64,000 nucleotides of DNA from Lepidodermella squamata (GCA_047495785.1 JBLDXI010000045.1:806001-870000), one strand, 5' to 3'; positions 17,539-50,801 are shown, counted from the first letter of the stretch. Program-made: numbers and translations. The notes: generated by a model from the letters alone, not told the origin.

Positions 17539-19132
17539 TCAGATCAAAGCTTGGTCAGCTTTTTCTTTGAGAAAAATCACGATTATCAGTTTAATACATG
17601 TAATGAGGACAAAAATTATAACAAGAGTGGATATTACAGTTTCCAGCATTGTAATGAAAGGCTGCGAGGATTCAGTTATTCCCTTCCGGCAATGGCCACT
17701 TTTCATCCACCAACCATCAATGTCATCGTAAACTTTGGCGTAAAGACTAGGATTATGCTTAGCCGCTAAGGCTCGTGAGCACAAATCGCAGAAATTGTTC
17801 GCCAACATAGAATGGTCCCAATAGTGGTGGACGTCGTAGTAAGATTTCCACCAGAAATACGACTCGAAAAGCGTTTGATTAGCAGCAACAAGTGAAAGAT
17901 AACTCGCCAGATGCTTCGGCGAGTCAAAATCTGCAGCGTCGATGTAAGAATGAGGCGGGGCGAATTTAGACATATTAACCCCGTTGTAAACAACCGGTAT
18001 AAGGTCCAGTCCCGCGGCTCGGTAGAATTTCTCCGTCAAATAATCTTCGCACAACGAATTTTCGAAAGCCAAGTAAAATTTGTAATGAAAGCTGATAAAT
18101 GACAAACAAGCCGGCGGAGATTCTTTCCACTCCCCATTTTTGCATATCCCTTCGGATAATTTACTGCCGCTGTGGCTAGAACATCCGCCGATCACCTCGA
18201 CATCGGTATGTTTTTGCAGCTCATAGATGTAAGTTAATCGATTCGAAACACTGACACAATTGGAAATCATTGCAACAGCGGTGCCTAGCTTTGAGGAAAG
18301 TTTAGGCTTGTTCGATTGTCCGACGATTGAGCGAGGTAGAAAAACGCCGTAATTCAAAGCGATGTCTGAATCTAGTCTGAAATAAAATTCATTCGAAATC
18401 GATTTCACATTAAATCTCATAGCTAACCGATAAGTCATTGTCCAATTGAAGAACCCTCTGAAGTCTGTTTTGAGGTATGGAACTGATAACTTGGATAGCT
18501 TGGGCCTCCAGCTGTAAGTATGCTCAGGCGATTCGGCTAGGGTGAATACCCAAAATTGATTTTGAGATCGGAATTTTGGTCTATCGGTAAAATTGAAGTC
18601 ATCACGAAAATGAACTAAAACAGCCGTTGCTTCATCCAGTTGAGATCGATTCGACGTAACGTAGCAGTTGGTCACCGGGCATTTAGCACGACTATACGGT
18701 TCCTTGCCGATCGCAACATTAGCTGGCAAACCCCACGTTGCTTCATTGTGGAATTTTGTCCATAGAAGAATCAAAACTCGGTCGTTGGTGTGATCATTTG
18801 TAATGTTGATATCGGGCTGAATAAGAGGGTAAGCAATCGTATTACCTCCTTGCCTTCGAGACCAATCAATATGATCCTCAGGTCTACAAATCAAAAATAG
18901 AAATTCAATAATATACTTACCACAGCGATAAAGATTTTAAATACCTGTCCAGCATGGTTTCATTGTAGATTTCAACTGATTCATCTGTGGGGTAGCTTGA
19001 AATAGTCGCCATCCGCCATATGACAGCTAATAAGATTTGCGATGCAAATAAAATCAGTAGCGACTTGAGCCTGAGACAAGGGCTGATGGCTAGCTCTAGC
19101 CGTCGAAAATAGCTGCGGCGGAATATTGACAT
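17539..19132 (-). CDS. Alpha-1,3/4-fucosyltransferase (GT10) paralogue 1
   Basis: N-terminal TM; ILLWT, CPVTNCYVT, ESPEH, FNWTMTYR|LDSDI and canonical YKFYLAFENSLCEDYLTEKFY motifs. Introns: 18944-18884 and an in-frame 51-nt intron within TYR|LDS. Confidence 0.95.
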
Positions 19133-20425: not shown

Positions 20426-22606
20426 TTAGTTCCAAGCATCGTCATCAAAAGCGAAATTCGGAATACCAGGGGTAGTAGTCGTAGTAGTCTGCTTTTGCTC
20501 GACAAACGGATAATTACCGTAAAAATGTGCATTACTACTGGTTGTTGCGCCTACTCCTCGACCCACATTTTCGAGCATTTGAATGTCATGAAACGCATCC
20601 ATGGTTGAAAGGGACGCCGACGAGGGCGATACAGGTATGTGGGGAACGTTGAATGATACCGCTGGCATTGGGTCGCTAACTGTCATTCGCGGCGGCGGGC
20701 TTACGTGATTCGAGTTGTGGGAGAACTTCATCCGATCTTTGCACCTGAATAAATTTCAAGGGAGTAAGAATGATACGAAGCCTCTGAATTTCTCCGATAC
20801 CTGCCGGCGGCTTTCTTGATCAATAGAGAAAACTTGTAAAGTAGACATATCGTTAAATCGACGAAAAGTTGCAAATATTCGAATACAGTTATAACAGTAA
20901 TGCCTGATGGATTTAAAATATCGTTTTACAAGTATCGTGAAGAGCGTAAAATCACCGATGAAAAGTGACGCGATACCACCGAGATAAGCAATGATGTCGA
21001 CGATTCCGAACACCTCCTCTTCGACTCGGCTCTGATTTTAAGACGATTAATTAGATTGAAATTAAAATTATGAAAAAATACGTGAACGACGAGCGATTTA
21101 TAGAAAATTGAAACTTTCGCATAGTTCCTGCTCAGCATTGCTTCAGACGAAGTGATAGCACTTGAATCGGGACCAAGCGTTGCGCAAGCCGCGAGTTCTT
21201 TCAGGTGACTCGATTCGCTGTCTAATCGAGACTCGCTCGTGCAACTTACATCCAGCTTTTTTGACCGTTTTCGCAAAGTTTCCAAGAAATTTTCGCACAG
21301 CCTTCTCTAGATTTGGATATTTAACCTTGAAATTAGCCAAGATGACAATCAAAGGTAATCACCAAAACTGGGCGAGTTGGATTCGGCCATTTGAGCATTG
21401 AGGTTGCAGTGTCGTAGAAATACCGACTGAAAGCAGAATTCAGCATTCAATTTGTGCAAAAGTTGAATTGTCTCACGTGCAAGGCTCTCTACAAAGATTG
21501 CATGAATCTCCTGAACAGCGATCGATACAAGACTGCCAACATTTCAAATCAACGTAAAGCAACCTGTCAAACGCAAAACATACCTGGAACTCGGAGGATG
21601 AATCATCATCTGTGCAACTGTTGTAAATTGCTTGATACAATTTGTGATCGATGGCTCCAAGTTTCTTTACCGAATGCTGAAAAATGTATTAAAAAATTTC
21701 TTCCTGTAAAACATGATGTGCGGTAATCTTCACCTTCTCCACGGCAATATTTGTCATCGTTCCAGGTTGTAATAAAATGCCATTAAGTAGCGGCCAGGGG
21801 GATTGACCCTGATTATGAACGAATATGCGCCAACCTACAGACTCGGTTGAGTCAAGGTAAAATTCTGCATCTGTCCTAAGAATTAAGGAGAGGCCTCCAT
21901 TTTCACCGGGTTTGCTCGACACCTTTTTTGAGTTCGAATTAAAGGTGTAACAATTGCCAAATTTTGAATTCCATTGATAGAAAGCAAAATCGCTGGAAAA
22001 TATTCTTTAAAATAGGCGGGTGAATTCTTGAACCATAGCTTTTACCCGTTGATTAATTGGCAAGGTTTCGAATCGAAGCGGCATGATACGATGAGGTCAC
22101 ACAGAAAATGACCAGCTCTGTAATGGTCATTACCTTTGACGAGTTTCGGCAGCACATTAGCTGTTTCGAGGTCTTCGATTGACAACGACGCGTTTAAGCC
22201 GCTGGCTTGCAGCCAAGAACTAGTCACCAGGTTGTTGCTGCATAAAGTCACTGCAGGGAAAACCGAGTTTTCTACTTCAGCCGATCGATGACTCGTAAAT
22301 GTTTGACGCTTCAACAATTTCGAGACAAATAGGATCATGGAATAGACGAAACCAGCACAGCATATTCCGAAAATCATAAGCCATAGGAATTTTTTCAGGA
22401 ATCCTGTAAAACGGTATAGGAACCACAGAACCTTCAATATACTTCAAAATGTAACCAGGTTGTTTGGCGATCTGTGGAATGCCGTGAACTGTTGTTTCTC
22501 GAAAATGTGAATACAAATACCGCCTGAGTCTAGGCCGTTTCAAAGCTTCCGGTTCGTCGAACTGCTCGGCAGAATTTGTATAAAGGCGGTACACGAACCA
22601 AACCAT
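20426..22606 (-). CDS. DEG/ENaC (ASIC/degenerin family) ion channel subunit, about 10 exons
   Basis: Pre-TM1 TTVHG motif, TM1, FPAVTLCSNN, GNCYTFNS, GLSLIL, GWRIFVH, Cys-rich thumb, NYAKVSIFY, TM2 YLGGIASLFIG|ITVITVFEYL. All junctions are GT-AG and in frame. A small extra first exon (ATG 22672) is possible. Confidence 0.93.
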
Positions 22607-24266: not shown

Positions 24267-25896
24267 ATGCGAGACATGAGGCTTAGATTTAGAGCTTTCC
24301 TGTATCTAATTCTTTCCAGCGTGTTGGTTTCGTTTTTTCATTCAAGTTCTGTCAGCAATAGCGACCATGGATATTACATCAGTGCCGAAAAGCAAATTGT
24401 ACCTGAGTCTTTCGCAAAATTGTTCTCCTTCGAGTATCTGTTCACTCGCAATGGTCCAAACTCGATGTAAAAGGATAACATTCTACCAAATTTTGTTATT
24501 CAGTCTTACTTTTCTCGTAAAAAGGCTACCTCTTCAATACCCACCAACTGAGTTCATGAATTTGAACAAAATGCGTGAAATCAACGAGCAGTATCAAAAT
24601 ACCTTTAATTATAGCACCGTAATTCTACTATGGACTAGCCTTTTCGGCCGCGGGGATTGGGGGCTTGGCGAAATGGGGAACGCTCCATTTCAAAAACTGA
24701 AGTGCCCGGTCTATAATTGCTACGTCACACGCGATCGCGATTACTTGCCGCTGGCTTCGACGGTGGTCTTCAATTTTCGCGATGACTTCAATCCAAAGTA
24801 TGAACAATGTCCACCATCGGCAAAAATTAGACTGTATTTTCTTTCAATTCAGGATTATCCCAAAACATCGAACCCGGCACCAGCGCTACGTTTTCTTCCT
24901 TTGGGAATCGCCAGAGCATACGTACAACTACGGATGGCAATACAGCATGACTAAAGCTCGGCAATTTTTGAAAAATTTAAATGGCTTTTTCAACTGGACA
25001 ATGACTAGTCGGTTCGATTTGCGAACAATTTTTCCCATAGCAATCCGTAATTTCTGTTATAACAAAGTCTAGACTCGGATATTCCTTTCTTGTACGGAAA
25101 GTTTGTTCGAAAGCCGCAGCCTAATCAAAACGAGCCGGCAATTGATAGGCTGTCTTCTAGAAAGAAGAATTTGATTTGGATGCAAACCAACTGCAACACC
25201 CGTTCGCATCGCGATATCTTTGTCAAAGAGCTGCAAAAATACATAGATTTTGATATTGTCGGTGGCTGTCCGGGTTTAGACTCGAATCGCAACCTAACGG
25301 AGGGCTTTTGTAAACGTCAGGATCCTTTCACGCCAATGACCAGTGAATGCCTCGACTACATCAGATCGAATTACCGGTTCATGTTGGCCACGGAGAATTC
25401 ACTATGTCGTGACTACGTTACCGAGAAATTCTATCGAGCTACAACAACCTTGGAAGTAGTGCCAGTTGTCTACAACGGTGCCAACATGAGCCTGTTTGGT
25501 CCTCCAGGATCCTACATCGACACAATGGACTTCGCTACACCAGAAGAGCTAGCAAATGAGCTGAAAAAGGTAATTAAGATCCCAAAATTGACTGCCAACG
25601 TGACAATATTGCTTTTGTAGATTGCGAATGACACGGACAGATACAACTCGTATTTTTCTTGGAAAGATCAATATACTGCCCATAATCTCTGGGACAGTGA
25701 CGCTTTCACTCAGAATTTTTGCGATCTGTGCGCTAAAGTTAACATGGCTGAATTGGATCCGAAAAGACATGCAAAGATCTATCATAACATCGACGACTGG
25801 TGGACAAAGGGAGGATCATGCTATGAAGGAAGAACTAATTACACCCTCAATGTAACTGAAGACCGGAATAGATCTTCGCTTGGCTATAACATTTAA
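24267..25896 (+). CDS. Alpha-1,3/4-fucosyltransferase (GT10) paralogue 2, 5 coding exons
   Basis: N-terminal TM, ILLWT, CPVYNCYVT, WESPEH, FNWTMTSR|LDSDI, YRFMLATENSLCRDYVTEKFY, FCDLC; four GT-AG introns restore the frame. Confidence 0.93.
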
Positions 25897-28047: not shown

Positions 28048-29690
28048 ATGGATCGCAAATGGGGTATATTTCTTCTCATTTCAACGTTCGGCATTATGCT
28101 TATGCTGTTACAATCAACACTGATGGGGACTAAGAGCGTCATTGATATCGTACGATCCGCGGCCTATGACGACAATGCCGATCCAGTGCAACAGCAAGCG
28201 ACTTATGCCGATGAAATTCATGAAAACAGCATTATTAAATCGTAAGCTAATTCGCGTCTCTTGTTGATCTTTCTCAAATTTTCCTGTTCTCCCATATAGG
28301 AATCTTGCGCTTCAATATCCGCAAACTGAATTTATGAATTCCAGTTCCTTATCTAAATTGAGCGATTCATTCGGAGCAAAATCAAACGCGAGTGATTTAC
28401 TGGTCATATTGCTGTGGACAAATTTATTCCACCGAACTGATTGGGCTCTTGGCGAACAGTTGGGGCAAGAGCCGTTCAAAAAGCTCAAATGTCCCGTGTC
28501 AAACTGCTACGTTACAAGTGATCGAGCTTATCTCAACAACGCCTCAGCTGTCTTAGTAAATTTCAGAGATGACTTCAATATGAAGTAAAATTATCTAAAT
28601 TTTGCCTTGTCGGATATTGTTGATTCCGTTTTTGTTTTAGTGATAGACCCAAGCTCAGACCGCCCAATCAACATTGGATCTTTTTCCTATGGGAGTCGCC
28701 GGAGCATACCTATCATTGGGTTTGGCAGGATAGTATGAAAGCCTATCCGCATCTCAAAGACTTCGGAGGTTTCTTCAACTGGACTATGACTTATCGGTAG
28801 GCTATATTTTCGACGATATCGCTTGAAATTCCTCATTGTTTATTGTAATATAGGATAGATTCAGATATTCCTTTCCTTTACGGAAGATTTTTGCTCAAAC
28901 CTCAACCTGACCCGAGCCAAAGAAGTATCGATCGATTAGGATCGAGGAAACGAAATGTTATATGGATTCAAAGTAACTGTAATACCCGTTCGCATCGAAA
29001 CGAATTTGTACAAGAACTTCAGCGATACATCGACGTCGATGTGATTGGAGGATGTGCCCCCAGCTCTAATAAACAACTAACCGAAGGCATCTGTAAACGG
29101 CCGGATGTATTCAAGCCGATGACAGAGGAATGCTTCAATTACATAAAATCAACTTATCGCTACTATCTAGCGACTGAAAACTCGCTTTGCCGAGATTATG
29201 TGACGGAAAAGTTTTTCAGAGGCGCTACCCTTGATCTCATCCCTGTGGTTTACAACGCGGTCAACATGTCACTTTTCGGGCCTCCAATGTCTTACATCGA
29301 CTCGAAAAATTACGCCTCGCCGAAATTATTAGCTGAGGATTTGATAGCGGTGAGAAAATGTCTCTTGTCCCAAATCAATTTTTTTATATAATTTATGTTT
29401 AGATTTCCGAAGACCCTAGTAGATACAACTCGTATTTTCAATGGCGGGAGCATTACACAGTGGAAAATCTGTGGGATAAAGACGCTTTCGCTCGAACTTT
29501 CTGTGATCTATGCGCCAAGGTGACTATGGCAAATTTAGAACCTGAGCGGCATCAAAAAGTTTACTCGGACATTGACGACTGGTGGATGACGAAAGGATCG
29601 TGCATCGAAGGGAAAAAGCAATACAAATCTCGTTACCTCACGCGGAATTTGCTCTCCTTATTCGCGTCTTCAACTACCAAACAAAAATGA
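28048..29690 (+). CDS. Alpha-1,3/4-fucosyltransferase (GT10) paralogue 3, 5 coding exons
   Basis: Same motifs (WESPEH, FNWTMTYR|IDSDI, YRYYLATENSLCRDYVTEKFF, FCDLC); four GT-AG introns. Confidence 0.95.
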
Positions 29691-29886: not shown

Positions 29887-31344
29887 ATGTTTCGTATGAA
29901 AATTATATTGAATAAATTCGTCGTTATTTTTCCATTTTTCGCGCTATTTTTCATCGCAATCTTTTTTATACCCGAAAATTACGTTCAAACCCGAATTCCT
30001 CATCGATCGTCGAAACGAAGTATTGTTAACTCGTCAATAACTCTCCGAAATAATGTTACTTGGAATGCAACTATCATCTCTAATCCTGTCCATCAAAAAC
30101 TTCCATTTCAATTTCCGTACAGCGAATTCGGAAATGTGACCCATCTGAAGCTAATCGAACAGAAGTTTTTGAACAAATCGGACGATTTACTCATCATCCT
30201 ACTTTGGACCAGTTTATTCGGCAGGAAAGACTGGGGTCTCGGTAGCGACCTTGGACAGGCCCCGTTTTTACGCATGAAATGTCCTATCTCAAATTGTTTT
30301 GTTACAACCGATCGATTTTACCTTCCAACTGCATCAACCGTTGTTGTAAATTTTCGGGATGATTTGAGCAGCACGTAAGCTATGAAATAATCGTTTTCCG
30401 ATTTTACCAATATTTTATAGAGATAAGCCAAAAATTCGACCGCCTAGCCAACATTGGGTTTTCTTTCTATGGGAAAGTCCTTACTATACCTACGACTATA
30501 CCTGGGACAAAGGCCTAGAAAGCCATCCTTTTCTGCGGAATTTTTTCAATTGGACAATGACCTACCGTCTCGATTCAGATATTCCATTCCTTTTTGGGCG
30601 GTTTGAACGAAAGAAAACTAGCAAAACGCCACCGTCAAGATTCAAAGTCGACCGTCTTACTGGTAAGACGAAAAGTGCTGTTTGGCTGGAATCATTCTGC
30701 GGAGCTGTTTCGAAACGCGAGGCGTTTGTTCATGATTTGAGGAAATACATCGATGTCGACATGATCGGGCAATGCGGGTCGAACCCTGATGCGAATCTAA
30801 CAGAGGGTGTCTGCAAACGAAACAGCGTCTTCGATCCGATGAGTAAGGAATGCCTCGATTACATCAATTCGACGTATCGCTACTATTTGGCGACAGAAAA
30901 TTCACTTTGTCGCGATTATGTGACGGAGAAATTTTTTCGTGGTGCTTCGTTGAACTTGATCCCTATTGTTTATAACGGAGCGGACATGTCTCAATTCGGC
31001 CCGCCCCATTCCTATATCGATGCCAAGGATTATTCTTCCGCTAAGGAACTAGCCGCAGCAATGCACGAGGTATAGGATACTCAACATTTAATTTCATATT
31101 TTAACGATTTTTTAATTAGATTGCTAACGATACTGCCAGGTATAATTCTTATTTTCGTTGGAAAAATCATTATTCGGTGGAAAATTTCTGGGATCGAGAC
31201 GGCTTCACGCGGAACTTCTGCGATTTATGCGCAAAAACAGTAATGGCTAGAATGGAACCTGAGAAGCATCGGAAAACCTATGATGACCTATACGATTGGT
31301 GGGTAACTAAAGGGTCTTGCTATCCAGGCAAAACAGAAATTTAA
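29887..31344 (+). CDS. Alpha-1,3/4-fucosyltransferase (GT10) paralogue 4, 3 coding exons
   Basis: TM, ILLWT, WESPY, NWTMTYRLDSDI, YRYYLATENSLCRDYVTEKFF, FCDLC; two introns. Confidence 0.95.
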
Positions 31345-31525
31345 CCTGAGTCTCTCTCACGTATGAGCGGTCATTTTTCGCCGCCATCTGCTTTGTGTCT
31401 TAAGCCGGGCCACGCGATGCTGGAAACAAAGAAAAGCGTGCCGCGTTTAAAAGAATATTTCAGCTGAAATAAAATAAACACTACGCTCCGTTTCATTCAC
31501 ACATGCGTTATTTTTGTCGACTATC

Positions 31526-33375
31526 ATGAATAGCATTATTTCGCATTGCCTCATTGCAGGCATCTCAATTTGGGTCATGTTTATTCTTCAGGGTCATCTC
31601 GATTTCGAAGATGGTACTCGTAAGTCATCGATGATCAGTTTTCGTATTTTCTGTGCCCCGGGATCGAATTTTTTCACCTTTAGCGGTTCATTTTTTATCA
31701 TAGGTTCCGAAACTTGAAATTTGATGTTTCAGAAATATTACTGCCACTATTGTTTAGTGATTCATGAACTCAATTTATAGATTATGAGCAGACCTCGAGC
31801 AATCAAAAAGTTGAACCTAAATCTGCCCGAGAAGGCCCATCCTGGCTGGTGCTTTTGGAAATTCACCGAAGCACAACTTTGAACTACGATGTTTGCAGTG
31901 CTGCGGTTATTTCTCGCGATCTGCTGCTAGCGTCAGCTCATTGTTTTTCCAACAAGTTTGAGATAACAGGGTAATTTCCAATGAATTTCAGAGAATTATT
32001 ATGTTATTATCATTTAACGCAGACTTTTAGCCTTTTTTGGCCCGTCCGAATCTCGCGGCTTCTACAAGTACCGGCGATTGATAAATACAGCAAATATCTA
32101 CGTAGAAAATGATTTCGCTTTCATTCACATGGAACCAGCAATTATTTTCGACGACCAAATTCAACCTATTGCTATTCCAATCGAGAATATCGCTGAAAAA
32201 TGTCGCGAAGGAGGCCCCGCTGCTGTCGATGGGTGCCGCAATTCAACAGTTACCGGCTACCACCTCAATAAAGGTAGTTAAATTCTATTTCGTTCCGCAA
32301 TTTTCCTAATTCTGCTATTATAGAACTGGATCGATATCAGGAATTTTCGATGAAAATTAATTTTGGATCCGATTGCACCTCATTTTACGGCTCATCGGAT
32401 TCTAATAATTCAGTGGGCGATTTGATCGTATGTAACTTCAACGGAACTGAAAAATTAGTTGGCATCGCTTGGTCCAGTTCCAACTTCACTCGAATTTCCA
32501 AGTCGGCCGAGTTGATCAACAGAACTCTGGAAAATGGGGTGATAACTGCTTCCCGGGATTACACACATTTGATGCGGGCAATTAAAGACTCGGCCGATGC
32601 TGACACCATTGCAATTTTGCTGCGATATGGCGCAGCCGATTCGATAAATGCGAAACTCGGCGATGGCTGGACGGCTTTGAGGTTCGCTATCGAAGCTCGA
32701 AATCCGCAGATAGTCGAATTGCTACTTCAAAACGGCGCTAAGAAAACAGTGAACGACAAATCCGTCGACGGCTATTCATGTCTTCGAGTTGCGGCTAATG
32801 ACGACGAAGTGGAAATTGTTCGAATTCTCGCGGAGAATGGCGCCGATGTTAATGAAGCTATCAACGACGATCGGACCCTCTTGATGACAACGATTTTGAA
32901 CAGCAATAACGCTGAGATAGTTCACACGCTGCTGATGAATGGCGCGAATGCTTCTGTCAACGCGAAGACGCTCGATAATGGAACAGCTTTAAGAATGGCG
33001 GTGGAGAAACAAAATTACGAAATTGCTCATCTTCTGCTCGAGTACGGCGCTACTGAATCTTTGAACGATACAGCAAGTGATGGCTTTTCAGTGTTGAGTT
33101 TGGCGGTTTCGCAAAATTCGAGCTCTGACATCATTCGCCTCCTGTTGGGCTACGGCGCCGATGCGAACGAGCGTTGGGATAATTCTGGCGCGACGGTGCT
33201 CATGAATGCGGTTCGCTCGACCAACAACACGGAGGTTGTTTCGGCTTTGCTAGACTACGGCGCCGAGATGTCGATCAATAGCCGCGATGACAGCGATCAC
33301 TCGGTGCTGATGTACGCCCTGGCGAATGGGAACTTAGAAATGGCCGATCTGCTCAAAAGTTACGGTGCTCAATGA
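31526..33375 (+). CDS. Signal peptide + degenerate trypsin-like (S1) domain + 8 ankyrin repeats
   Basis: Spliced product contains PSWLVLL..VCSAAVISRDLLLASAHC, NDFAFIHM..IQPIAIP and SVGDLIVC..LVGIAWS..FTRIS, then eight GxTALxxA...LLxYGA ankyrin repeats in the same last exon; three GT-AG introns in frame. Confidence 0.85.
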
Positions 33376-33924
33376 TTATTATTTGTGCTAAATTTTGATG
33401 AGTCATAATGTGAACTTTGCAAAAATAAAAGTTGAATCTTAAAAATACGTTAAAAGACCCTTCGTTTTTGCCGGTGACTTGCTTTTTAATGCCGTACGAT
33501 AACAACACAGGGTTTATTGTCGTGTTAAATTCCCCGTCTCCTATGAGCTTTCGAATGGCGCAAGTCCAAAAATGATTCGAGTAATACGTCATTTTTAGGA
33601 AATTTTAAAAGCAAGGCAACTCAAATGTCGATTTCTGACCCCCTCTCCCAAAAATAACATTTTAGGGCGTTGCGCTCAGTTATCGAAACAAAATGAAGAT
33701 TTTGCAGGGAATTTACCTGAAGTTTACGTGATAATCGGGCAATTTTGGACTGCGCATCAATGCGGCTGCGCAAAAATATATTTTTCTCAATTTCTTCGGA
33801 ATTTTTTTTTCAAATTTGACCCAAAGCTCAGAACATTCACAATGCCATTCCATATGCAAAAGAGCGCGTCCAGAATTGCCCGCTAATTGTTCAATTTTAG
33901 ATATTATTAATGTTTTCGATCATT

Positions 33925-34021
33925 CGGGAAGAACTTTGTCACGTAGTTTCTAAAGGACAATTTAAAAAAGAAAGGGGCACTCTATTTGTCCCTTAGAAAC
34001 CACGTGAAAAAGTTCTTCCCG
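33925..34021. repeat. Imperfect inverted repeat (about 37-bp arms, about 22-nt loop)
   Basis: cgggaagaactttgtcacgtagtttctaaaggacaaat ... atttgtcccttagaaaccacgtgaaaaagttcttcccg. Confidence 0.85.
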
Positions 34022-34580: not shown

Positions 34581-36066
34581 ATGAGGCTGATACCCGCCCG
34601 CATCCCCAAGTCGTGCTTCATCGCCTTGCTGTTGCTAGCGCTAGTGATGCTGGTCATCCACGTCAACCGCCTGCCAATTAGCATCAATGAAATCAAACGT
34701 TTTTATCAAATAAATGCCGATGTGCACATTGGAGATGTCGCAAGCACCTTGGTCGTTTCCCCGTCAAATGGCAGTGAAATCGACGGACTGGTACTCGAAG
34801 AATTCACGATATCTATCGACGATCTACCGAAAGCTTATCCAGCAGTGGGCGAGGACGATGTTGGAAAACAAACGAAATTAGCCGCTGTTACCAAAAATAA
34901 AGCCCCAGTGATCATTTTACTCTGGACAGCTCTATTCCACCGCGAGGATTGGGCGCACGGCGAGTTGGGTTCAAAGCCTTTCAAAAAGCTGAATTGTCCT
35001 GTTTCAAACTGTTTCGTGACTCGGGATCGAGCTTATCAGAAAAATGCTTCCGCAGTTGTAGTTCATTTTCGGGATGATTTTAAATACGAGTGAGATTTTA
35101 GTTTCCTTGAATTTTCATATTTTAATTTTGTAATTCAGCGACCGACCTGCCTTCAGACCTTTGGATCAGCTCTGGATTTTCTTCATGTGGGAATCGCCTG
35201 AGCACACGTATGACTGGACGTGGCAGGGCAGCCGCGCATCACCTCCAATTTTGAAGCATTTCGCTGGCTTTTTCAATTGGACAATGACGTATCGAGTTGA
35301 CTCTGACGTGCCAGCTATCTATGGCAGATTCCTGCTCAAGAAACACCCCAGCGATGACATCAACATCGATCGGTTGAAAGGCAAGAAAAAAAGCGTTGTT
35401 TGGGTTCAAACCAACTGCGATACGCGATCTCATAGGTAACACATTTTGAAATCAATATCTAGCAATAATCCTAAATTTTTCAGACGGGACTATGCTCAAG
35501 AGCTTCAAAAGCACATCGATGTCGAGATTATCGGATATTGCGGGTGGCAAGCAACAACTCCAGTTACTACCGGAGTTTGCAAGCGAACAAACGTGTTCTG
35601 GTCGACAACACCGCAATGCCGTAGCTACCTCAATTCTACCTTCAAATTCTTTCTAGCTGCCGAGAACTCACTCTGCGAAGATTATGTTACAGAAAAGTTC
35701 TACCGAGGCGCTCTTCTAGATGCGATTCCGATTGTTTACAACGGCGCTAATATGACTCGTTTTGCCCCTCCGCATTCTTATATTGACGCAAACGACTTCA
35801 AAAGCCCGAAAGAGCTAGCAGCCCATTTGAAGAAGCTAATGAACGACCCGGTGGCTTACAATTCCTATTTCTGGTGGAAGCGTTTTTACGATGTCGAACA
35901 CATGTGGGACGACGATACCTTTACGAAACATTTTTGCAAGCTATGCGAAAAAGTGACTGAGGCTCAAATCGATGCGAGCAAACACGCGCAGGTTTATTCA
36001 GATATCGAAAATTGGTGGATGACCCTGGGAAAATGTTACGAGGGAAAAACTAAATTCAACAGATAA
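34581..36066 (+). CDS. Alpha-1,3/4-fucosyltransferase (GT10) paralogue 5, 3 coding exons
   Basis: TM, ILLWT, WESPEH, FNWTMTYRVDSDV, FKFFLAAENSLCEDYVTEKFY, FCKLC. Confidence 0.95.
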
Positions 36067-38839: not shown

Positions 38840-39097
38840 TCGACATGCTGTGTTTCTTAGAGTTTCAAAGCTTGATTGTGTTATTTATCACAAAACTCTT
38901 AGACCACATTTTTGCCTCGTATTGCAATAAAAAAAGACAGATGAGTTAGTCTCAAATATTGTCGCTCACTATCAGGTATAATTAGTACTGGGACAAGGGA
39001 TCTGGAAAAAATTGGCTGGGTAAACAAGGGCAGTTTGGAACAATGGTCATTCATCAGGTATTTGGGATATAACCGGGCGTATCATCTCGACTCAAAA

Positions 39098-40613
39098 ATG
39101 CGGCTATCTCTTTTGTCGGCATTAAAAAGCCTCTGCTTCCTTGCTAGCATCCTAATCGTCTATCTCTATTACACCAGTTATGAAGAAGAAAACGATTTGT
39201 TCAGTCAATCGCCTTCGACGGCAAGCTTCACGGAACATTTCGAGGTGCGCCGGCGGCGGAAAATGCCCGATCAGTATCCGCCGAGCCCATTCGCTAACAT
39301 TTCTCATCTATTGGAAATTCGTAATCGGTACAAGGCAAAATCTGATCGACTTCTAACGATTCTGCTATGGACGCCGCTGTTCAAACAATTCGATTGGTTT
39401 CTCGGGCCAGAGCTGGGTCAATTACCTTTTCAGGAAATGAACTGTCCTGTGGACAACTGCTTCGTAACCACAGACCGCGACTCATTTGCCACGTCCGATG
39501 CGGTCTTGATGAACTTTCGCGACAACTACGACTACTTGTAAGTTATTTTTTTCTGAAAATTATGACGTAAAACAATATGATATAGAGACGTGCCTTCAAA
39601 TTGGCCGCCAAATCAGCACTGGATATTTTTCAACTGGGAAAGTCCTGAACACACCTACGACGCGGCTTGGACTGACCAGCCCCTACCCATGCATCCATTT
39701 TTCAGGAATTTCTTCAATTGGACCATGACCTATAGGTAATAATTTTTCTTCAAGAAAGCTTGTTTATAGCTTCAATTGAATCTATAGATTAGATTCCGAC
39801 ATTCCATTCATGTATGGCCGTTTCGTCAAAAAGCAGCATATCGAGGACACATTTCATGTGGATTTAAAGCTTCATAGAAAGACAAAGAATTTAGTTTATA
39901 TCGAATCCAACTGCGGATCCGTTTCGAAACGAGACGAATTCGTACGTGAATTGCAACGTTACATCGACGTTGAGATAATCGGAGCTTGCGGGGAGCCGGT
40001 CAATCAAAACCTGACAGATGGAATCTGCAGCCGGCCCAGTGATTTCGAACTAATGACTCCTGAATGTACTGAATACCTCAGTTCGACCTACCGCTTCTAC
40101 CTGGCTACTGAAAATTCAATCTGCCGAGATTACGTAACCGAAAAGTTCTTTCATGCGGCTTCGATGGATCTAATTCCTGTGTATTACGGTGGAGCGAATA
40201 TGAGCCTATTTGCCCCACGTCACTCATTTATTGACACGAGAGATCACGAATCGCCTCAACAACTGGCTGATGCTTTGATCGCGGTATTGAATATCCGATT
40301 TTTTTAAAATATTTTATTCAATTTTTTTATGAAGATTTCGAAAGATCCATTGCTCTACCGGTCGTATTTCTGGTGGCGTCAGTTTTACAAAGTCGAAAAT
40401 ATGTGGGACCACTTGGCCTTCAAGCGCAGTTTTTGTGATTTGTGTGCGAAAGTTACTGAAGCCCATCTCGAGCCTGAAAAACACGCAAAAGTGTATGATG
40501 ACCTTTTCGACTGGTGGTTCATGAAAGGTGAATGCAAAGAAGGTCAAACGTGGAATGCCGATGAAGGCATCAGTGCGGAAATCGAACATTTTATCGATAA
40601 TTATTTCGCGTGA
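39098..40613 (+). CDS. Alpha-1,3/4-fucosyltransferase (GT10) paralogue 6, 4 coding exons
   Basis: TM, ILLWT, WESPEH, FNWTMTYR|LDSDI, YRFYLATENSICRDYVTEKFF, FCDLC. Confidence 0.95.
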
Positions 40614-40816: not shown

Positions 40817-42262
40817 ATGAATTTGTTACTTCAAACACTCGCTATCTCAGCTTTAGTTGTTTCTGTTGTGGCCGATCGGTTTAAACGGCCTTCTTACTGC
40901 AAATTGCCAGCCGAGTCCGGACGATGTCTAGCCTACATCGAACGGTACTACTACGACAAAAATGCTGGCGAATGCAAACTTTTTGTGTATGGGGTAAGTT
41001 CAAAGTAGTAACATTTCGAAATTTGAATTTTTTATTGCCAATTGAAGGGCTGCGACGGAAATAAAAACAATTTCGAAACGATCGCCGAATGCCAAAGAAG
41101 GTGCATGAACCTTATTACCGCAACTACGCCGCAGTTGCCTATCGCTCGACCGGCTTATTGTGAAGAAAAGCCGATTCCCGGTTCGTGCTCTGAAAAATTG
41201 CGGCGGTTTTACTACGATCACGAACGTGGAGAGTGCCGAGTCTTCACATACACCGTAAAAGATAGCACTTGATCTGAATTTGTTGATTAATTTCCGAATT
41301 TTATTTAGGGTTGCGAGGGCGGCTTGAACCGTTTCAAATCGCTTAAAAAGTGTCGCGAGGTTTGCCAAGACAGGCCCTGGAGACCGAATGTGAACCCGAC
41401 AACCGCAGCTACCGCAGCATCGCCTGAAATTGTGACCAAGCCGTCAACTTTCGACGTTCAAAATTGTAGGCTCAAGGCGGAGACTGGGCCCTGCAAAGCT
41501 TACTTCACCCGCTACTACTACGACTCGTCAAAGGGGAGATGCAAGACTTTTGTCTACGGCGTAAGTTTTTTTAGACAAGTTAAAATCATTTTCGAATTTA
41601 TTTTTAAAGGGCTGTAATGGCAATAAAAACAATTTCGCGTCGATGGAAGAGTGTGAAAAGAAATGCGTTGAAGGGCTGGCGAAGACCACGACAACACCCG
41701 CAGCTGCCGTTGAAAATGAAGGCGATTGCTTGCAAGAGTCAGATTCCGATGCCCGAGATTCTAGTGCTCGGCCGACCTATTGTTCGCTGAAACCGAAAAC
41801 TGGCCGGTGCAAGGCCTTCTTCAAGCGATATTACTACAGCGTCAAGGATGGAAAGTGCAAAGCTTTTGTCTATGGGGTATAGTAATAATTAGAGTCATTT
41901 TTCGTGGTAATTTTCTAATTTTTCAGGGTTGTGATGCCAATCGTAACAACTTCGAATCCTTCGACCAATGCATGAGGACTTGTTATCGCTCCAGGGGATC
42001 TTCGAAGAAGCATCATCGCAAGAGCAGCGAGAAGCGCAAAAGCTATCGGAATAAAAGCAAAAGTTCCTCGAAGCCATGGTCTACGGAGTTTATCAAACCC
42101 CACGCCCTGAAACTTGTCAGACAGCCGGCTGAAACGACAACGAAATCAGTGCCCAAGACTACAACTTCCGCAACTACTACAACCACTACGTCGCCAGCAG
42201 CTACAACTACAACATGTTCGACTACTACTACGACTGCTTCGGTCACTTCAACGCGAAAATAA
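40817..42262 (+). CDS. Secreted four-domain Kunitz/BPTI serine protease inhibitor with basic segment and Thr-rich tail
   Basis: Signal peptide; four six-Cys Kunitz domains (GxC..RYYY..C..FVYG|GC.GN.NNF...C...C), each split by a phase-0 intron at the same position. Confidence 0.95.
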
Positions 42263-45725: not shown

Positions 45726-45965
45726 TTCTGATAAAGATGAGCCAAGTGCGTGGAATGTGACGGCGCGTTGGGCCGTGAATCGATTTTTTGTGCATTCCGT
45801 TAATTAAAATGATTGCAATTAAGGCGGATTGAATTTCTTCTGGGATTAAAAATACACGTTTTGTGCTGTGGCGAAACTGACAATAACCTCTGAGAGCTTA
45901 TATTATCCCCTTTCTATTTTCAGTTTCTTCTTCTCGGGGGCAGTAGCGATTTATCTTTTACATGG

Positions 45966-45970
45966 AAAAA
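45966..45970 (-). terminator. RNA polymerase III terminator (T5) of tRNA-Met copy A
   Basis: TTTTT begins 7 nt past the tRNA 3' end on the minus strand. Confidence 0.8.
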
Positions 45971-45976
45971 GTAGGC

Positions 45977-46050
45977 TGCCCCCTGTGAGGATCGAACTCA
46001 CGACCTCCAGATTATGAGACTGGCGCTCTAGCCAACTGAGCCAAGGAGGC
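45977..46050 (-). tRNA. tRNA-Met (CAT), elongator type
   Basis: GCCTCCT TG GCTC AGTTGGCTA GAGC G CCAGT CTCATAA TCTGG AGGTC GTGAG TTCGATC CTCAC AGGGGGC A: full cloverleaf, G1-C72 pair, TTCGA T-loop and the U31-U39 opposition typical of eukaryotic elongator Met. Confidence 0.97.
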
Positions 46051-47128
46051 TGCTCTGGATAAAAGAGTTCGATTGGGCTATCATAATGAGATGAATGTAA
46101 CATTTAGGCGCGTCTTTTTCTTCGTTGACTGATTTTTCAACCTAAAATGTAAATCGCAAGTGGCTACGAGCAATTGCAAAGTACCATGGCACTGGAAATT
46201 GGAATAATTATCAAAAAGTGATTATACGATGATGTCGATTGCTAATGAGATGCAAAATTAATCACGAGAACATACATTTGGAATTGAAATGCAGATTCAA
46301 CTGACCTACCCCGACTCCTAATTGACTCCCGAACACGTTGACGAGTAATTGTAAACGTTTTGATTTTAAATACATGCCGCTCTTTTGCTCTCTTTTCTGT
46401 GTGACCTTGCCAGCTGATGAAAAAGCTTTCCGGTCGACCTGTGAACTAATTAACACACCTAATTAGAGGAATTTTCAGTCACCGACCTGTAATTTAATTG
46501 AACAGAGTTCAAGTCCTAACTGTATTTAAGGTATGCCTCATCAGTCAATCGCAACACCCAACAGTAGGACCAGGGGAGAGTCCCGAAGGTTCTCCAATTG
46601 CATTGCTCCCGTCCTGGTTCCCCAATACCCGACTCCATTTAGTTCGCTGTTGTAAAAATCTTAGGCACAGGGGCCCCGATAAAGCAGGAACCGACGGCAG
46701 CCATTTTGCAGAATTGTGCAGTGGATTATTATTTTGAAGAGAATTAGTACACTTATACTTTCTAGCGTCTTAATCGCGCCCTATCAAGATTAACCTCTGC
46801 ACATAGCAGGTGCTCATGCGAGCCGCGAGTTAGAAGGCCCTGCCTACTGCCTATGATTATTATGCTTCTGTCATTTACTGTTTTTTTCAAAGCTCTCTTG
46901 CCTTCTGTCCTTTATTCCCGCCATTCTGCCTTGTAACTTCGGTCCTGACTGATAATTTGTGAAATCGTTTCTCAGTGATAAAACATATAATACTTAGCAA
47001 GTGATTCGGGCCCTTTATTTTATGAGCCTCAAACGAGTGTGTGAAAAGGTGTGAAATATGGCTGAAATGAGACGCCAAGTCGCATATGAGCTATACCGGA
47101 TCTCATTTTGGTATAATTAGCATTTAGC

Positions 47129-47926
47129 ATGTCAAGATTAACATGGCTTTTTCTCGCCGCAGTTCTGTCGCTGGCAGCATCGAATCCTTGGCATCAAGCG
47201 GAAGAAGAATACGAAGATGAAGAGGTTGGTGTAGCCTTTCAATACATAGATGTGTGATATCGAATATTGCTACAGGAAGGCTGTATGATTCCGAAGTTGT
47301 CCAACTCGTTCAAAATCAAGTTCCTCAAATACTCCACTACATCCCCACTTTATCGATTCATCAGAACGAAGGAAGAGGAGATAGTCCCTCTTGGTTCGCG
47401 ATTGTTCATCGCTTGTGAGGCCGGTTATAAAGTAGATGGCCCGAAAGAGCATGCTTGCAAACGAGATGGAACTTGGGATATCACTCCCAGGGGTTGCGTT
47501 CCAAGTAAGGAAAAGAGATCATCTCAAAACAACGTTAAGAGACTTGAAATTGTAATTTTTACAGCACCAAGCACTGAAACTACCACTCCAGTTTTGACTG
47601 AAGAGGAATACGAGGATGACGAAGAAGAACAAATCTCGCCCGAACCAATCACTATCGTCGAAGGCACTACGAAACCAACCATCCAAACTGTAGCTGACCC
47701 ACTACAATTTTTTACCGATCCTGAGCAATCCACTTCCAGCCCAACCACTGCATTATCCGAGAAATCACAGGCATTACAAGAAGGAGCAGCAGGTGAATCT
47801 GCCGTGAGAACAACCGAAAAAGCAGCTCTTGCAGCGAAAGAAATTTCTACTACTGCCTCAACTCCGCTCCCTACAAAAACCGAACCAAATTTATTATTCA
47901 TATATTTTATTTCTTTATTGATTTAA
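47129..47926 (+). CDS. Secreted/surface protein with one Sushi (CCP)-like domain and Thr/Glu/Pro-rich stalk, copy A (shortened)
   Basis: Signal peptide MSRLTWLFLAAVLSLAAS; C..P..CEAGYKVDG..CKRDGTWD..P.C; two GT-AG introns; ends LLFIYFISLLI. Confidence 0.8.
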
Positions 47927-48975: not shown

Positions 48976-49471
48976 ATTATGTGCTGGCCGTGTACCAGTG
49001 GCTGGCCTCCCAGTTTTAGACCTAGTTACGCGACTGCTGTGCCATTGATTATAATCGGGGAACTCGCCGCAATGGGTTTAGCGTCGCTGAGTAAACAAAT
49101 AGTAACATGAATTTTGCGATTTTTTTCCCATTCACTTCTAGCGAGTTGCCTTGAAACCAATGGCAGAACCTAATCATTCCCAGCTTTAAAGAACCACGGT
49201 TCTGACGCTGGAAATTGAAGTAATCATCAATAAGTCATTACGATAATGCCAATTACTAGTTAAGTTCAAACCTAATCACGAGACGGTTTTGGAGTATATT
49301 ATTATAAGAAATAGAGCATCCCGCCCTAATTTCGGCCGCTTTATAGGTTTTCCCTACTTTGCCAGCCAGGTGAATTTTTAGAAAATATTCGGCAAAAGCA
49401 GAATTAAAGACGAGTTCTTAGGCTATTGAATGCCGCTTTCCGCGAGTCCGGACGATTTATCTTTTACATGG

Positions 49472-49476
49472 AAAAA
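49472..49476 (-). terminator. RNA polymerase III terminator (T5) of tRNA-Met copy B
   Basis: Same T5 run as in copy A. Confidence 0.8.
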
Positions 49477-49482
49477 GTAGGC

Positions 49483-49556
49483 TGCCCCCTGTGAGGATCG
49501 AACTCACGACCTCCAGATTATGAGACTGGCGCTCTAGCCAACTGAGCCAAGGAGGC
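49483..49556 (-). tRNA. tRNA-Met (CAT), elongator type, identical to copy A
   Basis: Sequence identical to 45977-46050. Confidence 0.97.
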
Positions 49557-50801
49557 TGCTCTGGATAAAAGAGTTCGATTGGGCTATCATAATGAGATAA
49601 ATGTAACATTTAGGCGCCTCTTTTTCTTCGTTGACTAATTCTTCAACCTAAAATGTAAACCGCAAGAGACTACGAACAATTGCTAAGCACCATGGCCGTG
49701 CTGGTACTGGAATAATTATCTAAAAGTGATGATGATGATGTCGATTGCTAATGAGATGCAAAATTAATCACGAGAACATTTTGGAGTTCATAAAAAAAAT
49801 CAGTTGGTATAACTGCGACAAACAAACAATGCCTCCGGGTAATTGAAATGCACGTGTAACTCATCAGCTGACCTGACCTGACTCCTAATGGACTCCCGAA
49901 CACATGTTTTCTCGTACAGAAAAAAGAACAGGAGCTTCGCTTGTTGGATAAAATCACAATCATGTGTTAACTGCTGAACTGGTATATACGAGTAATTTAA
50001 TTCTTTTCGATTTTGAATACATGTCGCTTTTGTACCTTTTCTTCGTACAGACAAAAGCACGGGAGCATTGGCAAATAAAATGTGTATACGGGTGAACTGG
50101 TATTGACGTAATTTTATACGTTTTGATTTTAAATACATGCCGCTCATTTGCTCTCTTTTCTGTGTGACCTTTCCAGCTGGATGAAAATGCTTTCCGGTCG
50201 ACCTGTTAACTTATAAAATATACCTCATTATACGAATTATGAGTCACCGACCTGTAATTAAATTGAACAGAGTCCAAGTCCTGCCTGTATTTAAGGTCTG
50301 TCAATCTCAACCCCCAACAGCAGGACTAGGGGAGAGACCCGAAGGTTCTCCAATGGTATTGCTCCCGTCCTAGTTCTTCCACACCCGCTTGCAAACAGAG
50401 ACAGAACCTGAACATTTCTCTCAGATGGCTGTCAAGTTCACCAGCAAGCTAGTTAGGCTAACCGTGGGGGGTTACCTTAAAAGAATTTTTTCAGCGCCGA
50501 GCATCCACCTTCATCGGCGATAACTTGGCGTACGCGACCCAAAATTTGCCATAAAAATGCGTTGCCCGTTACCTCCACCAGGAGGCTGCTGGTGTTACTT
50601 GAACCGCAGTCGGCTCTACGATCCCTGTGCGGTAACACCCAAAATTAGCTAAACCAATAACACTTCGCGGTTCGATAACTGCTAGCAACCGCCTTCGACC
50701 AGCAAAAGATTCGTGAAGTTTTAGATAAAGTGGATTATTTGCTGGAAGAGAATTAGTGCAATTACTTTCTAGCGCAATTCTCATTTTGGTTTATACCTAG
50801 C

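What the first reader, a model, noticed from the sequence alone, without database searches (positions are those of the whole stretch)
31526..33375. Apparently secreted trypsin-like pseudo-protease fused to eight ankyrin repeats
Seen: a hydrophobic N-terminus and an S1 protease fold that keeps the His (ASAHC) and Asp (NDFAF) motifs, but GDSGGPLVC has decayed to SNNSVGDLIVC. Eight ankyrin repeats follow with no TM segment in between, and there are many N-x-S/T sequons (NGT, NFT, NRT, NAS, NDT, NSS, NNT), several within the ankyrin part. All ankyrins sit in one intron-free exon, while the protease half has three introns. Known: ankyrin repeats are overwhelmingly intracellular; secreted cases such as latrotoxins and symbiont effectors are exceptions. 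Inference: a lineage-specific chimaera acting as an extracellular binding, recognition or toxin-like protein, with the ankyrin block possibly captured by retroposition or lateral transfer.
Basis: partly seen in the sequence, partly recalled or inferred. Interest (0 to 1): 0.8.

Follow-up and report, generated by a model that had tools for sequence, protein, structure and literature searches.

The report
Dead trypsin-like domain fused to ankyrins
An animal (probably arthropod) gene appears to encode a secretion signal, a catalytically dead trypsin-like domain and eight ankyrin repeats in one protein; no relative with this combination was found, but there is no evidence yet that it is expressed or secreted.

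Summary
A four-exon GT-AG model (31526-33375, +) has matching phases and about 528 codons. Its parts are a hydrophobic N-terminus, an S1 (chymotrypsin-fold) domain and eight ankyrin repeats. The S1 domain keeps the His57 and Asp102 motifs, but Ser195 is Val, Gly193 is Asn and Asp194 is Ser. Each S1 piece, searched alone, hits solved S1 proteases first, in colinear order and with conserved spacing.

Three corrections:
- The last third of the S1 domain lies in the same exon as the ankyrins, so the seam is inside an exon, not at an intron.
- The S1 domain is truncated: one internal segment and its last ~24 residues have no detectable counterpart.
- The ten N-x-S/T sequons are no more than composition predicts.

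A HMMER scan of 1.84 billion representatives with the seam region returned only ankyrin proteins. A word search and two metagenome scans found no relative either.

Best reading: an intact, lineage-restricted gene for a secreted, non-catalytic binding protein. Secretion and function are inferred. There are no retroposition hallmarks, no specific link to latrotoxins, and only weak compositional hints of a foreign ankyrin block. The joined-exon protein was never built, so no fold or signal-peptide test was made on it.

The parts
31526..31619 (+). Exon 1: start codon (A at -3) and a hydrophobic N-terminus of 31 codons plus 1 base. Read as a signal peptide or signal anchor. It ends in a phase-1 donor, GTAAGT.
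   Evidence: Sequence read. Kyte-Doolittle 19-residue maximum of 2.15. Splice sites printed.
31620..31780 (+). Intron 1 (161 nt, GT..AG)
   Evidence: An in-frame stop lies upstream of exon 2, so exon 2 needs an upstream start exon.
31781..31970 (+). Exon 2: short acidic linker and the S1 N-terminal segment with the His57 motif SAHC (His codon 31939-31941). Both cysteines align with the Cys42 and Cys58 pair.
   Evidence: Pfam Trypsin E=0.0014. All 41 solved-structure hits are S1 proteases, and the printed alignment to acrosin covers residues 13-56.
31971..32022 (+). Intron 2 (52 nt, GT..AG)
32023..32273 (+). Exon 3: middle S1 segment with the Asp102 motif NDFAF (Asp codon 32111-32113).
   Evidence: Solved-structure hits to enteropeptidase 90-118, fire-ant chymotrypsin and thrombin. 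The Pfam Trypsin model does not report it.
32274..32323 (+). Intron 3 (50 nt, GT..AG), inside the S1 domain.
   Evidence: S1 homology continues across it.
32324..32466 (+). Exon 4, first part: remnant of the S1 C-terminal lobe (about 47 codons). Val sits at the Ser195 column (32413-32415), Ser at Asp194 and Asn at Gly193.
   Evidence: Printed alignments to the chymotrypsin C chain. Beta strands appear here in both models, at low confidence.
32467..32556 (+). Exon 4, seam: about 30 codons with one helix. It is either a degenerate half ankyrin repeat or what is left of the S1 C-terminal helix. GC and GC skew step up here.
   Evidence: An ankyrin protein aligns from residue 48. Solved ankyrins align only from residue 72-74. 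Helix at residues 54-69 with pLDDT about 60. Composition.
32557..33375 (+). Exon 4, rest: eight ankyrin repeats with a three-repeat super-period, then the TGA stop at 33373-33375.
   Evidence: Ank_2 E=6e-39. Eight LLxxGA motifs. Repeat identity matrix. Eight helix pairs at pLDDT>90.
33424..33429 (+). AATAAA, 49 nt after the stop: the likely polyadenylation signal.
   Evidence: Sequence read.

Best explanation
This is one intact, spliced gene of an animal genome, probably an arthropod, lying inside a tandem array of fucosyltransferase genes. Its product of about 528 residues has three parts.

1. An N-terminal hydrophobic segment, which most likely directs the chain into the endoplasmic reticulum.
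2. A chymotrypsin-fold (S1) domain that cannot cut peptide bonds. The nucleophile Ser195 is Val, the oxyanion-hole Gly193 is Asn and Asp194 is Ser. About 14 residues between the two aligned blocks of the C-terminal lobe (roughly S1 positions 176-189) have no counterpart. The last ~24 residues have no detectable counterpart either.
3. A solenoid of eight ankyrin repeats joined directly to it.

The most likely function is a secreted (or lumenal) non-enzymatic binding or adaptor protein. The dead protease domain would act as a scaffold, as it does in arthropod serine protease homologs, and the ankyrin groove would act as a second protein-binding surface.

The fusion most likely arose by an in-frame join inside the last exon of an S1 gene, which cut off the S1 C-terminus and the N-terminal cap of an ankyrin array.

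Shown: the architecture, the reading frame, the catalytic substitutions and the lack of detectable relatives. Inferred: secretion, the binding function and the way the fusion arose.
For: - The splice model has canonical sites and matching phases.
- The frames of the three S1 pieces are open, with probabilities of 0.029, 0.011 and 0.034 in base shuffles.
- The S1 pieces hit solved S1 proteases colinearly, and homology is continuous across introns 2 and 3.
- The Cys42-Cys58 pair aligns with that of acrosin.
- The catalytic columns are as printed.
- Eight ankyrin repeats follow in the same open frame with no stop between them and the S1 remnant.
- Only exon 1 is hydrophobic, its flank is acidic on the C-terminal side, and the intron after it is phase 1, which is typical after signal peptides (my own knowledge).
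- AATAAA lies 49 nt after the stop.
- The repeats are only 18-46% identical to each other yet all keep the core motif, which argues for long-standing constraint on the array.
- Non-catalytic S1 homologs act as extracellular cofactors and regulators in arthropods (PMC10643904, PMC3764210).
Against: - There is no transcript, protein or ortholog evidence.
- The S1 domain is so diverged that the Pfam model fails on two of its three pieces. Each structure-database E-value is weak on its own (0.02-0.07).
- The S1 domain lacks detectable counterparts of part of its C-terminal barrel, so it may not fold as S1. This could not be tested because the joined product was not built.
- Ankyrin repeats are overwhelmingly cytosolic.
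- The ankyrin part has a single cysteine, and the sequons are at the chance level.
- The start codon lies only 48 nt after the AATAAA signals of the upstream fucosyltransferase gene, so the 5' end of the model is uncertain.
- The hydrophobic segment could be a signal anchor rather than a cleaved signal.
Confidence: 0.5

Rival explanations
1. The functional product is an ordinary cytosolic ankyrin protein translated from an internal Met of exon 4: the Met at 32350, or the Met in the first repeat. Exons 1-3 and the S1 remnant would then be a relic of a dead protease gene into which the ankyrin coding sequence was joined, now serving at most as a leader.
For: - Ankyrin repeats are normally intracellular (general knowledge).
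- The S1 part is strongly decayed and truncated.
- The sequons are not enriched, and the ankyrin part has one cysteine.
- GC and GC skew change at the seam.
Against: - The three S1 pieces keep open frames, canonical splice sites and matching phases, although they have diverged far beyond what an unconstrained sequence survives without stops.
- A structural cysteine pair and the His and Asp motifs are kept.
- The Met at 32350 has T at -3, whereas the Met at 31526 has A at -3.
- There is no stop between the S1 remnant and the ankyrins.
Confidence: 0.2
2. A young, lineage-specific fusion with no settled function, drifting towards loss. The open frame is there because too little time has passed.
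For: No relative of the seam or of the S1 remnant was found anywhere, and there is no paralog in the window. The gene lies in a dynamic tandem array.
Against: - The S1 part is very diverged from every known S1 protein yet is still open, which points to long evolution under coding constraint rather than a recent event.
- The ankyrin repeats are old duplicates, 18-46% identical, that still keep the fold motifs.
Confidence: 0.15
3. Origin rival: the ankyrin block was acquired from outside the lineage (from a bacterium, protist or virus) or by retroposition, and then fused to a native S1 gene.
For: - The block is intron-free, and its GC3 is 0.56 against 0.38-0.43 in the S1 exons.
- GC skew changes sign at the seam.
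- The best-scoring matches in the word search are unnamed metagenomic proteins and bacterial MAG ankyrin proteins. The first named animal hit comes at 83 bits against 115 for the top hit, and there are no arthropod hits among the best 120.
Against: - All matches are generic, at 39% identity or less.
- Neighbouring native genes reach GC3 of 0.50-0.51, and the RSCU correlation of the block with its neighbours (0.48) lies within the native range of 0.40-0.81.
- There is no poly(A) tract and there are no target-site repeats.
- Ankyrin similarity mostly reflects closeness to the repeat consensus.
Confidence: 0.15
4. An assembly artefact that joins two unrelated loci inside exon 4.
For: The composition step at about 32.4-32.5 kb coincides with the seam.
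Against: The join is in frame, with no repeats or gaps at the seam, and both flanks belong to the same fucosyltransferase array.
Confidence: 0.05

Closest known systems
Arthropod non-catalytic serine protease homologs (SPHs, e.g. clip-domain SPHs of the melanization and complement-like pathways; PMC10643904, PMC3764210)
   Same: A secreted-type S1 domain that has lost the catalytic serine, in what is probably an arthropod genome. Function is expected to come from binding, not cleavage.
   Different: - No clip domain was found.
- The serine is replaced by Val, not the usual Gly (my own knowledge).
- Parts of the S1 C-terminal lobe have no detectable counterpart.
- Eight ankyrin repeats follow, a combination I did not find in any hit or paper.
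Latrotoxins of widow spiders (PDB 7ptx, 9goa, 7pty; PMC8630228)
   Same: An arthropod protein with a signal peptide and an ankyrin-like repeat domain that ends up outside the cell.
   Different: Latrotoxins are about 130 kDa, with a connector domain, a helical-bundle membrane-insertion domain, a plug domain and 15-22 repeats (PMC8630228). Here there are eight repeats, an S1 remnant and none of those domains. The latrotoxin matches are generic, ranking below ankyrin-1/2 and designed repeat proteins.
Canonical cytosolic ankyrin-repeat proteins (ankyrin-1/2 4rlv and 7tw3, NOMPC 5vkq, designed DARPins 6mol)
   Same: These are the best sequence matches of residues 72-349 of exon 4 (E down to 4e-58). 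The fold is the same stacked helix-pair solenoid.
   Different: They are cytosolic or designed, and none carries an S1 domain or a signal peptide. None of the eight repeats here has Pro at the second position of the motif that opens the first helix, where the canonical motif has one (my own knowledge).
Vertebrate S1 pseudoproteases (haptoglobin, hepatocyte growth factor, protein Z, azurocidin; named from my own knowledge, none came back as a hit)
   Same: The principle is the same: an S1 domain kept as a binding module after the catalytic residues were lost.
   Different: They have different partner domains (sushi, kringle, Gla/EGF), a complete S1 fold and no ankyrin repeats. No specific sequence relationship was seen.

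Membership tests
Peptidase family S1 (chymotrypsin fold, Pfam PF00089) | Match to the family profile above the curated cut-off | tested here: not met
   Exon by exon: exon 2 scores 18.9 bits against a cut-off of 20.6. Exon 3 and the start of exon 4 are not reported even at E<=10. The joined product was not searched.
Peptidase family S1 (chymotrypsin fold, Pfam PF00089) | Colinear homology to solved S1 structures across the domain | tested here: met
   The three pieces hit S1 positions 13-56, 90-118 and about 153-221, in order and with conserved spacing. S1 proteins make up 41 of 41, 7 of 8 and 4 of 5 hits. Each single E-value is weak (0.02-0.07).
Peptidase family S1 (chymotrypsin fold, Pfam PF00089) | Catalytic triad His57, Asp102, Ser195, with the oxyanion hole Gly193 | tested here: not met
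   His and Asp are kept. Val aligns at Ser195, Asn at Gly193 and Ser at Asp194 in the printed alignment. It is therefore not an active peptidase.
Peptidase family S1 (chymotrypsin fold, Pfam PF00089) | Conserved disulfide cysteines | tested here: inconclusive
   - Cys42 and Cys58 align with those of acrosin.
- The Cys in the LIVC motif aligns with the Cys after the active-site motif of chymotrypsin.
- Its presumed partner in exon 3 (residue 71) is assigned only from spacing and my own knowledge. A search with that stretch alone found nothing.
- The column of the Cys that precedes the active-site motif holds Ser.
Peptidase family S1 (chymotrypsin fold, Pfam PF00089) | Complete two-barrel fold with triad geometry | not tested
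   This needs the spliced product, which has no reference and was not built. Exon 4 alone gives only low-confidence strands for the S1 remnant.
Arthropod clip-domain serine protease homologs | N-terminal clip domain ahead of a serine-less S1 domain | tested here: not met
   There is no clip-domain hit in exons 1-2. Only about 18 residues lie between the hydrophobic segment and the S1 start.
Ankyrin repeat proteins (Pfam PF00023, PF12796) | Tandem ~33-residue helix-turn-helix repeats matching the profiles above the cut-off | tested here: met
   Ank_2 scores 132.8 bits (cut-off 27.3) and Ank 111.8 bits. There are eight motifs with a period of 34-36 residues and eight helix pairs at pLDDT>90.
Latrotoxins | Connector, helical-bundle and plug domains ahead of 15-22 ankyrin-like repeats, about 130 kDa (PMC8630228) | tested here: not met
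   Only the ankyrin part matches latrotoxin chains, on their residues about 690-980. The N-terminal half is S1-like, and the total is about 528 residues.
Secreted proteins with a cleaved signal peptide | N-terminal signal peptide recognised by a trained predictor; product found outside the cell | not testable with these tools
   Only hydropathy, the charge distribution and a small residue at -1 (read) could be checked.

The most novel reading that the evidence does not exclude
This would be a genuinely extracellular, glycosylated ankyrin-repeat protein of an arthropod, made by fusing a dead S1 protease with an ankyrin array, possibly one of foreign origin. It would be a previously undescribed type of secreted recognition or adaptor protein that uses the ankyrin groove outside the cell.
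Probability: 0.3. Interest if true: 0.65.

Novelty: new variant of a known kind. Interest (0 to 1): 0.45.

Why it matters
Ankyrin repeats are among the commonest protein-binding modules, yet they are almost confined to the cytosol. A natural case in which they pass through the secretory pathway behind a dead protease domain would extend where this fold is known to work. It would also add a new partner domain to the pseudo-protease theme of arthropod extracellular cascades. The locus further gives a clean example of a domain fusion made inside an exon rather than by exon shuffling. If the S1 exons prove to be an untranslated relic, the finding reduces to an ordinary cytosolic ankyrin gene with an odd leader.

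Tried and rejected
- **Exact look-up** of ten window ORFs, including the ankyrin ORF from the Met at 32350: none is in the 15-billion-protein collection. No annotation or organism name could be recovered that way.
- **Word search with exon 4:** only generic ankyrin proteins, at 39% identity or less and none with a Trypsin domain. The hits with 91-99% query coverage are plain ankyrin proteins.
- **HMMER scan of 1.84 billion representatives** with exon 4 residues 1-125: 171 hits, all through the ankyrin part, none covering residues 1-27. The top hit is a ~1500-residue repetitive ankyrin protein on a eukaryotic metagenome contig.
- **Two metagenome scans** (seam region and ankyrin block): nothing.
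- **Pfam on exon 3 and the S1 remnant** at E<=10: no Trypsin hit.
- **Search for the missing S1 C-terminus** downstream of the stop: nothing.
- **Search with the last 34 residues of exon 3 alone:** nothing.
- **Paralogs in the window:** none.
- **Retroposition hallmarks:** none.
- **Organism placement:** the arginase-family neighbour was uninformative, with best identity 49% and a patchy set of taxa. The fucosyltransferase neighbour points to arthropods, mostly crustaceans, at only 31-39% identity. The contigs of its best unnamed relative hold no S1-ankyrin gene.
- **Literature searches** for the domain combination found nothing relevant.
- **Rejected:** a latrotoxin relationship and sequon enrichment.

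Full report
**What is there**

The region 31526-33375 on the + strand reads as a four-exon gene.
- Exon 1 is 31526-31619. Its ATG has A at -3, and its donor is GTAAGT.
- Exon 2 is 31781-31970, exon 3 is 32023-32273, and exon 4 is 32324-33375, ending in TGA.
- The introns are 161, 52 and 50 nt, all GT..AG. The phases (1, 2, 1) fit without any adjustment.
- The frame of exon 2 is closed by a stop just upstream of its acceptor and holds no Met, so it needs exon 1 or another upstream exon.
- AATAAA lies 49 nt after the stop.
- Counting exon by exon, the product has 31+1+62+1+83+1+349 = 528 residues.

I never built the joined protein.

**The protease half**

Each piece was searched alone.
- Exon 2 gives a sub-threshold Pfam Trypsin hit (E=0.0014, 18.9 bits, cut-off 20.6). 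All 41 of its hits among solved structures are S1 proteases. The best is acrosin residues 13-56, with both cysteines and the His motif aligned.
- Exon 3 is missed by Pfam. It hits enteropeptidase 90-118 with the Asp102 motif aligned, and 7 of its 8 hits are S1.
- The first 79 residues of exon 4 hit chymotrypsin, and 4 of 5 hits are S1.

Each E-value is weak (0.02-0.07). The case rests on the pattern: three independent queries hit one family, in colinear order, with spacing between blocks within about five residues of that in real S1 domains. The homology also runs straight across introns 2 and 3. This supports both the fold assignment and the splice model.

The frames of the three S1 pieces are open where base shuffles give probabilities of 0.029, 0.011 and 0.034.

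In the printed alignment, Val stands at the Ser195 column, Ser at Asp194 and Asn at Gly193. Ser stands at the column of the cysteine that precedes the motif. The domain is therefore catalytically dead in several independent ways, while His57 and Asp102 remain.

Taking the two alignment blocks together, about 14 residues of chymotrypsin between them (roughly positions 176-189) have no counterpart here. The alignment also stops about 24 residues before the end of the chymotrypsin chain. The S1 domain is thus both internally shortened and C-terminally truncated.

The assignment of the exon 3 cysteine at residue 71 as partner of the cysteine after the active-site motif is my inference from spacing. 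A search with that stretch alone found nothing.

**The ankyrin half and the seam**

Exon 4 scores 132.8 bits on Ank_2. It has eight LLxxGA motifs with a period of 34-36 residues. An AlphaFold model built with 40 ankyrin homologs has mean pLDDT 83.8, with eight helix pairs between residues 81 and 345 at pLDDT above 90.

The repeat identity matrix shows a three-repeat super-period. Repeats 1, 4 and 7 resemble each other (34-43% identity), as do repeats 2, 5 and 8 (26-46%).

Between the S1 remnant (about residues 1-47 of exon 4) and the first firm repeat (from about residue 78) lies a stretch with one helix (residues 54-69, pLDDT about 60).
- A repetitive ankyrin protein aligns to it as a repeat, from residue 48.
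- Solved ankyrins align only from residue 72-74.
- It is therefore either a degenerate half repeat or the remains of the S1 C-terminal helix.

The seam lies inside exon 4, not at an intron. GC rises there from about 0.38-0.43 to 0.46-0.56, and GC skew turns positive. No remnant of the missing S1 end was found after the stop.

This picture fits an in-frame join inside the last exon of an S1 gene, which removed the S1 C-terminus and the N-terminal cap of an ankyrin array. It does not fit exon shuffling. There is no poly(A) tract and there are no flanking direct repeats to support retroposition.

**Secretion**

Only exon 1 is hydrophobic: the 19-residue maximum is 2.15, against at most 1.35 elsewhere. 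So there is no membrane segment between the protease and ankyrin parts.

The hydrophobic core has about 14-18 residues. It is followed by Gln-Gly and an acidic stretch, and then by a phase-1 intron. From my own knowledge, this is the usual arrangement for a cleaved signal peptide, but a signal anchor is not excluded.

The aligned Cys42-Cys58 pair is consistent with folding in an oxidising compartment.

Against this, the ten N-x-S/T sequons are what an Asn- and Ser-rich composition yields: nine in exon 4 against 5.3+/-2.0 in shuffles, P=0.06. The ankyrin part has one cysteine. The start codon also sits only 48 nt after two AATAAA signals of the upstream fucosyltransferase gene, so the 5' end of the model is unusually tight.

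**Relatives**

- The word search with exon 4 returned 282 proteins. The 120 listed all carry ankyrin domains and none carries a Trypsin domain; identity is 39% or less.
- The full HMMER scan of 1.84 billion representatives with exon 4 residues 1-125 returned 171 proteins. All matched through the ankyrin part, and none covered residues 1-27.
- Two metagenome scans were blank.
- There is no paralog in the window.
- None of ten window ORFs is in the protein collection, so the source genome is not represented there.
- Four literature searches found no description of this domain combination.

Exons 2 and 3 could not be searched in the large collections in a useful way. The claim of absence is therefore strongest for the seam and the ankyrin exon.

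**Context**

The window is from an animal: it carries DEG/ENaC channel, Sushi and Kunitz exons.

The gene lies between the fourth and fifth of six GT10 fucosyltransferase paralogs, on the same strand as five of them. The named relatives of these fucosyltransferases are nearly all arthropods, mainly crustaceans (Daphnia, Tigriopus, Eurytemora, Armadillidium, Cherax), at 31-39% identity. The best relatives, unnamed, reach 43-46%. I take the source to be an arthropod from a poorly sampled lineage. This is not established.

**Interpretation**

The architecture is real at the DNA level. It does not depend on the splice model for its key point: the S1 active-site remnant and the ankyrins share one uninterrupted exon.

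- **Best reading (confidence about 0.5):** an intact gene for a secreted or lumenal, non-catalytic binding protein. It would work like arthropod serine protease homologs (PMC10643904, PMC3764210), with an ankyrin solenoid as an added binding surface.
- **Cytosolic ankyrin product from an internal Met (0.2):** the S1 exons would be a relic.
- **Young fusion without settled function (0.15).**
- **Assembly artefact (0.05).**
- **Foreign or retroposed origin of the ankyrin block (0.15):** this is a separate question about origin. It rests only on a modest GC3 excess and on generic best hits from metagenomes and bacterial MAGs.
- **Latrotoxin relationship: rejected.** Those toxins have connector, helical-bundle and plug domains and 15-22 repeats (PMC8630228). 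They match here only as generic ankyrin hits, below ankyrin-1/2 and designed repeat proteins.

**Verdict**

This is a new variant of a known kind: a pseudo-protease with an unusual partner domain. Interest is 0.45. The combination and the prospect of extracellular ankyrins are uncommon. But it is a single gene model with no expression, ortholog or localisation evidence.

Apart from the points marked as my own knowledge or inference, the statements above rest on the alignments printed.

Noticed in passing
window 17542-18894 (-), 24367-25836, 28385-29642, 29887-31344, 34581-36066, 39035-40550 (+): A tandem array of six GT10 alpha-1,3-fucosyltransferase paralogs, 37-51% identical to each other. 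The S1-ankyrin gene is nested between the fourth and fifth, 181 nt after the stop of the fourth.
   Followed up: partly
window ~45900-47750 and ~49450-51430: A tandem segmental duplication with a 3.5-3.7 kb offset (blocks 83-99% identical). It carries two tRNA-Met(CAT) genes with identical scores (45977-46050 and 49483-49556, both on the - strand) and a Sushi-domain exon (47267-47926).
   Followed up: partly
window 53122-54084 (-): An intronless arginase-family (formimidoylglutamase-like) ORF of 320 codons. Its best relatives reach only 49% identity, and the named ones are taxonomically patchy: Hydra, bdelloid rotifers, Capsaspora, trypanosomes and Nitrospinota MAGs. This could reflect patchy retention or transfer.
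   Followed up: no
window 33925-33960 / 33986-34021: An inverted repeat with 36-nt arms, 92% complementary, and a 25-nt loop. It lies in the spacer between the S1-ankyrin gene and the next fucosyltransferase. It could be a hairpin RNA or a small transposon end; there was no Rfam match at gathering score.
   Followed up: no
window 32557-33372: The eight ankyrin repeats show a three-repeat super-period: repeats 1, 4 and 7 are alike, and so are 2, 5 and 8. The array therefore grew by duplicating a unit of about 105 residues. None of the repeats has Pro at the second position of the motif that opens the first helix, where the canonical motif has one.
   Followed up: partly
window 31468-31478: Two overlapping AATAAA signals, presumably for the upstream fucosyltransferase, lie only 48 nt before the S1-ankyrin start codon. 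A good acceptor-like site (pyrimidine run then CAG) lies at about 31455-31463. Either the promoter is extremely compact, or there is some form of co-transcription or trans-splicing.
   Followed up: no
window 932-2761 (-), 3292-4674 (-), 59820-62087 (-), 63054-63980 (-): Long open frames (308-755 codons) of normal amino-acid complexity with no Pfam match. They lie in the GC-richer ends of the window (0.47-0.50).
   Followed up: no
window 22042-22437 (-), 41780-42262 (+): Exons of a DEG/ENaC (amiloride-sensitive channel) gene and of a Kunitz-domain gene. Together with the Sushi exon, these mark the window as animal.
   Followed up: no
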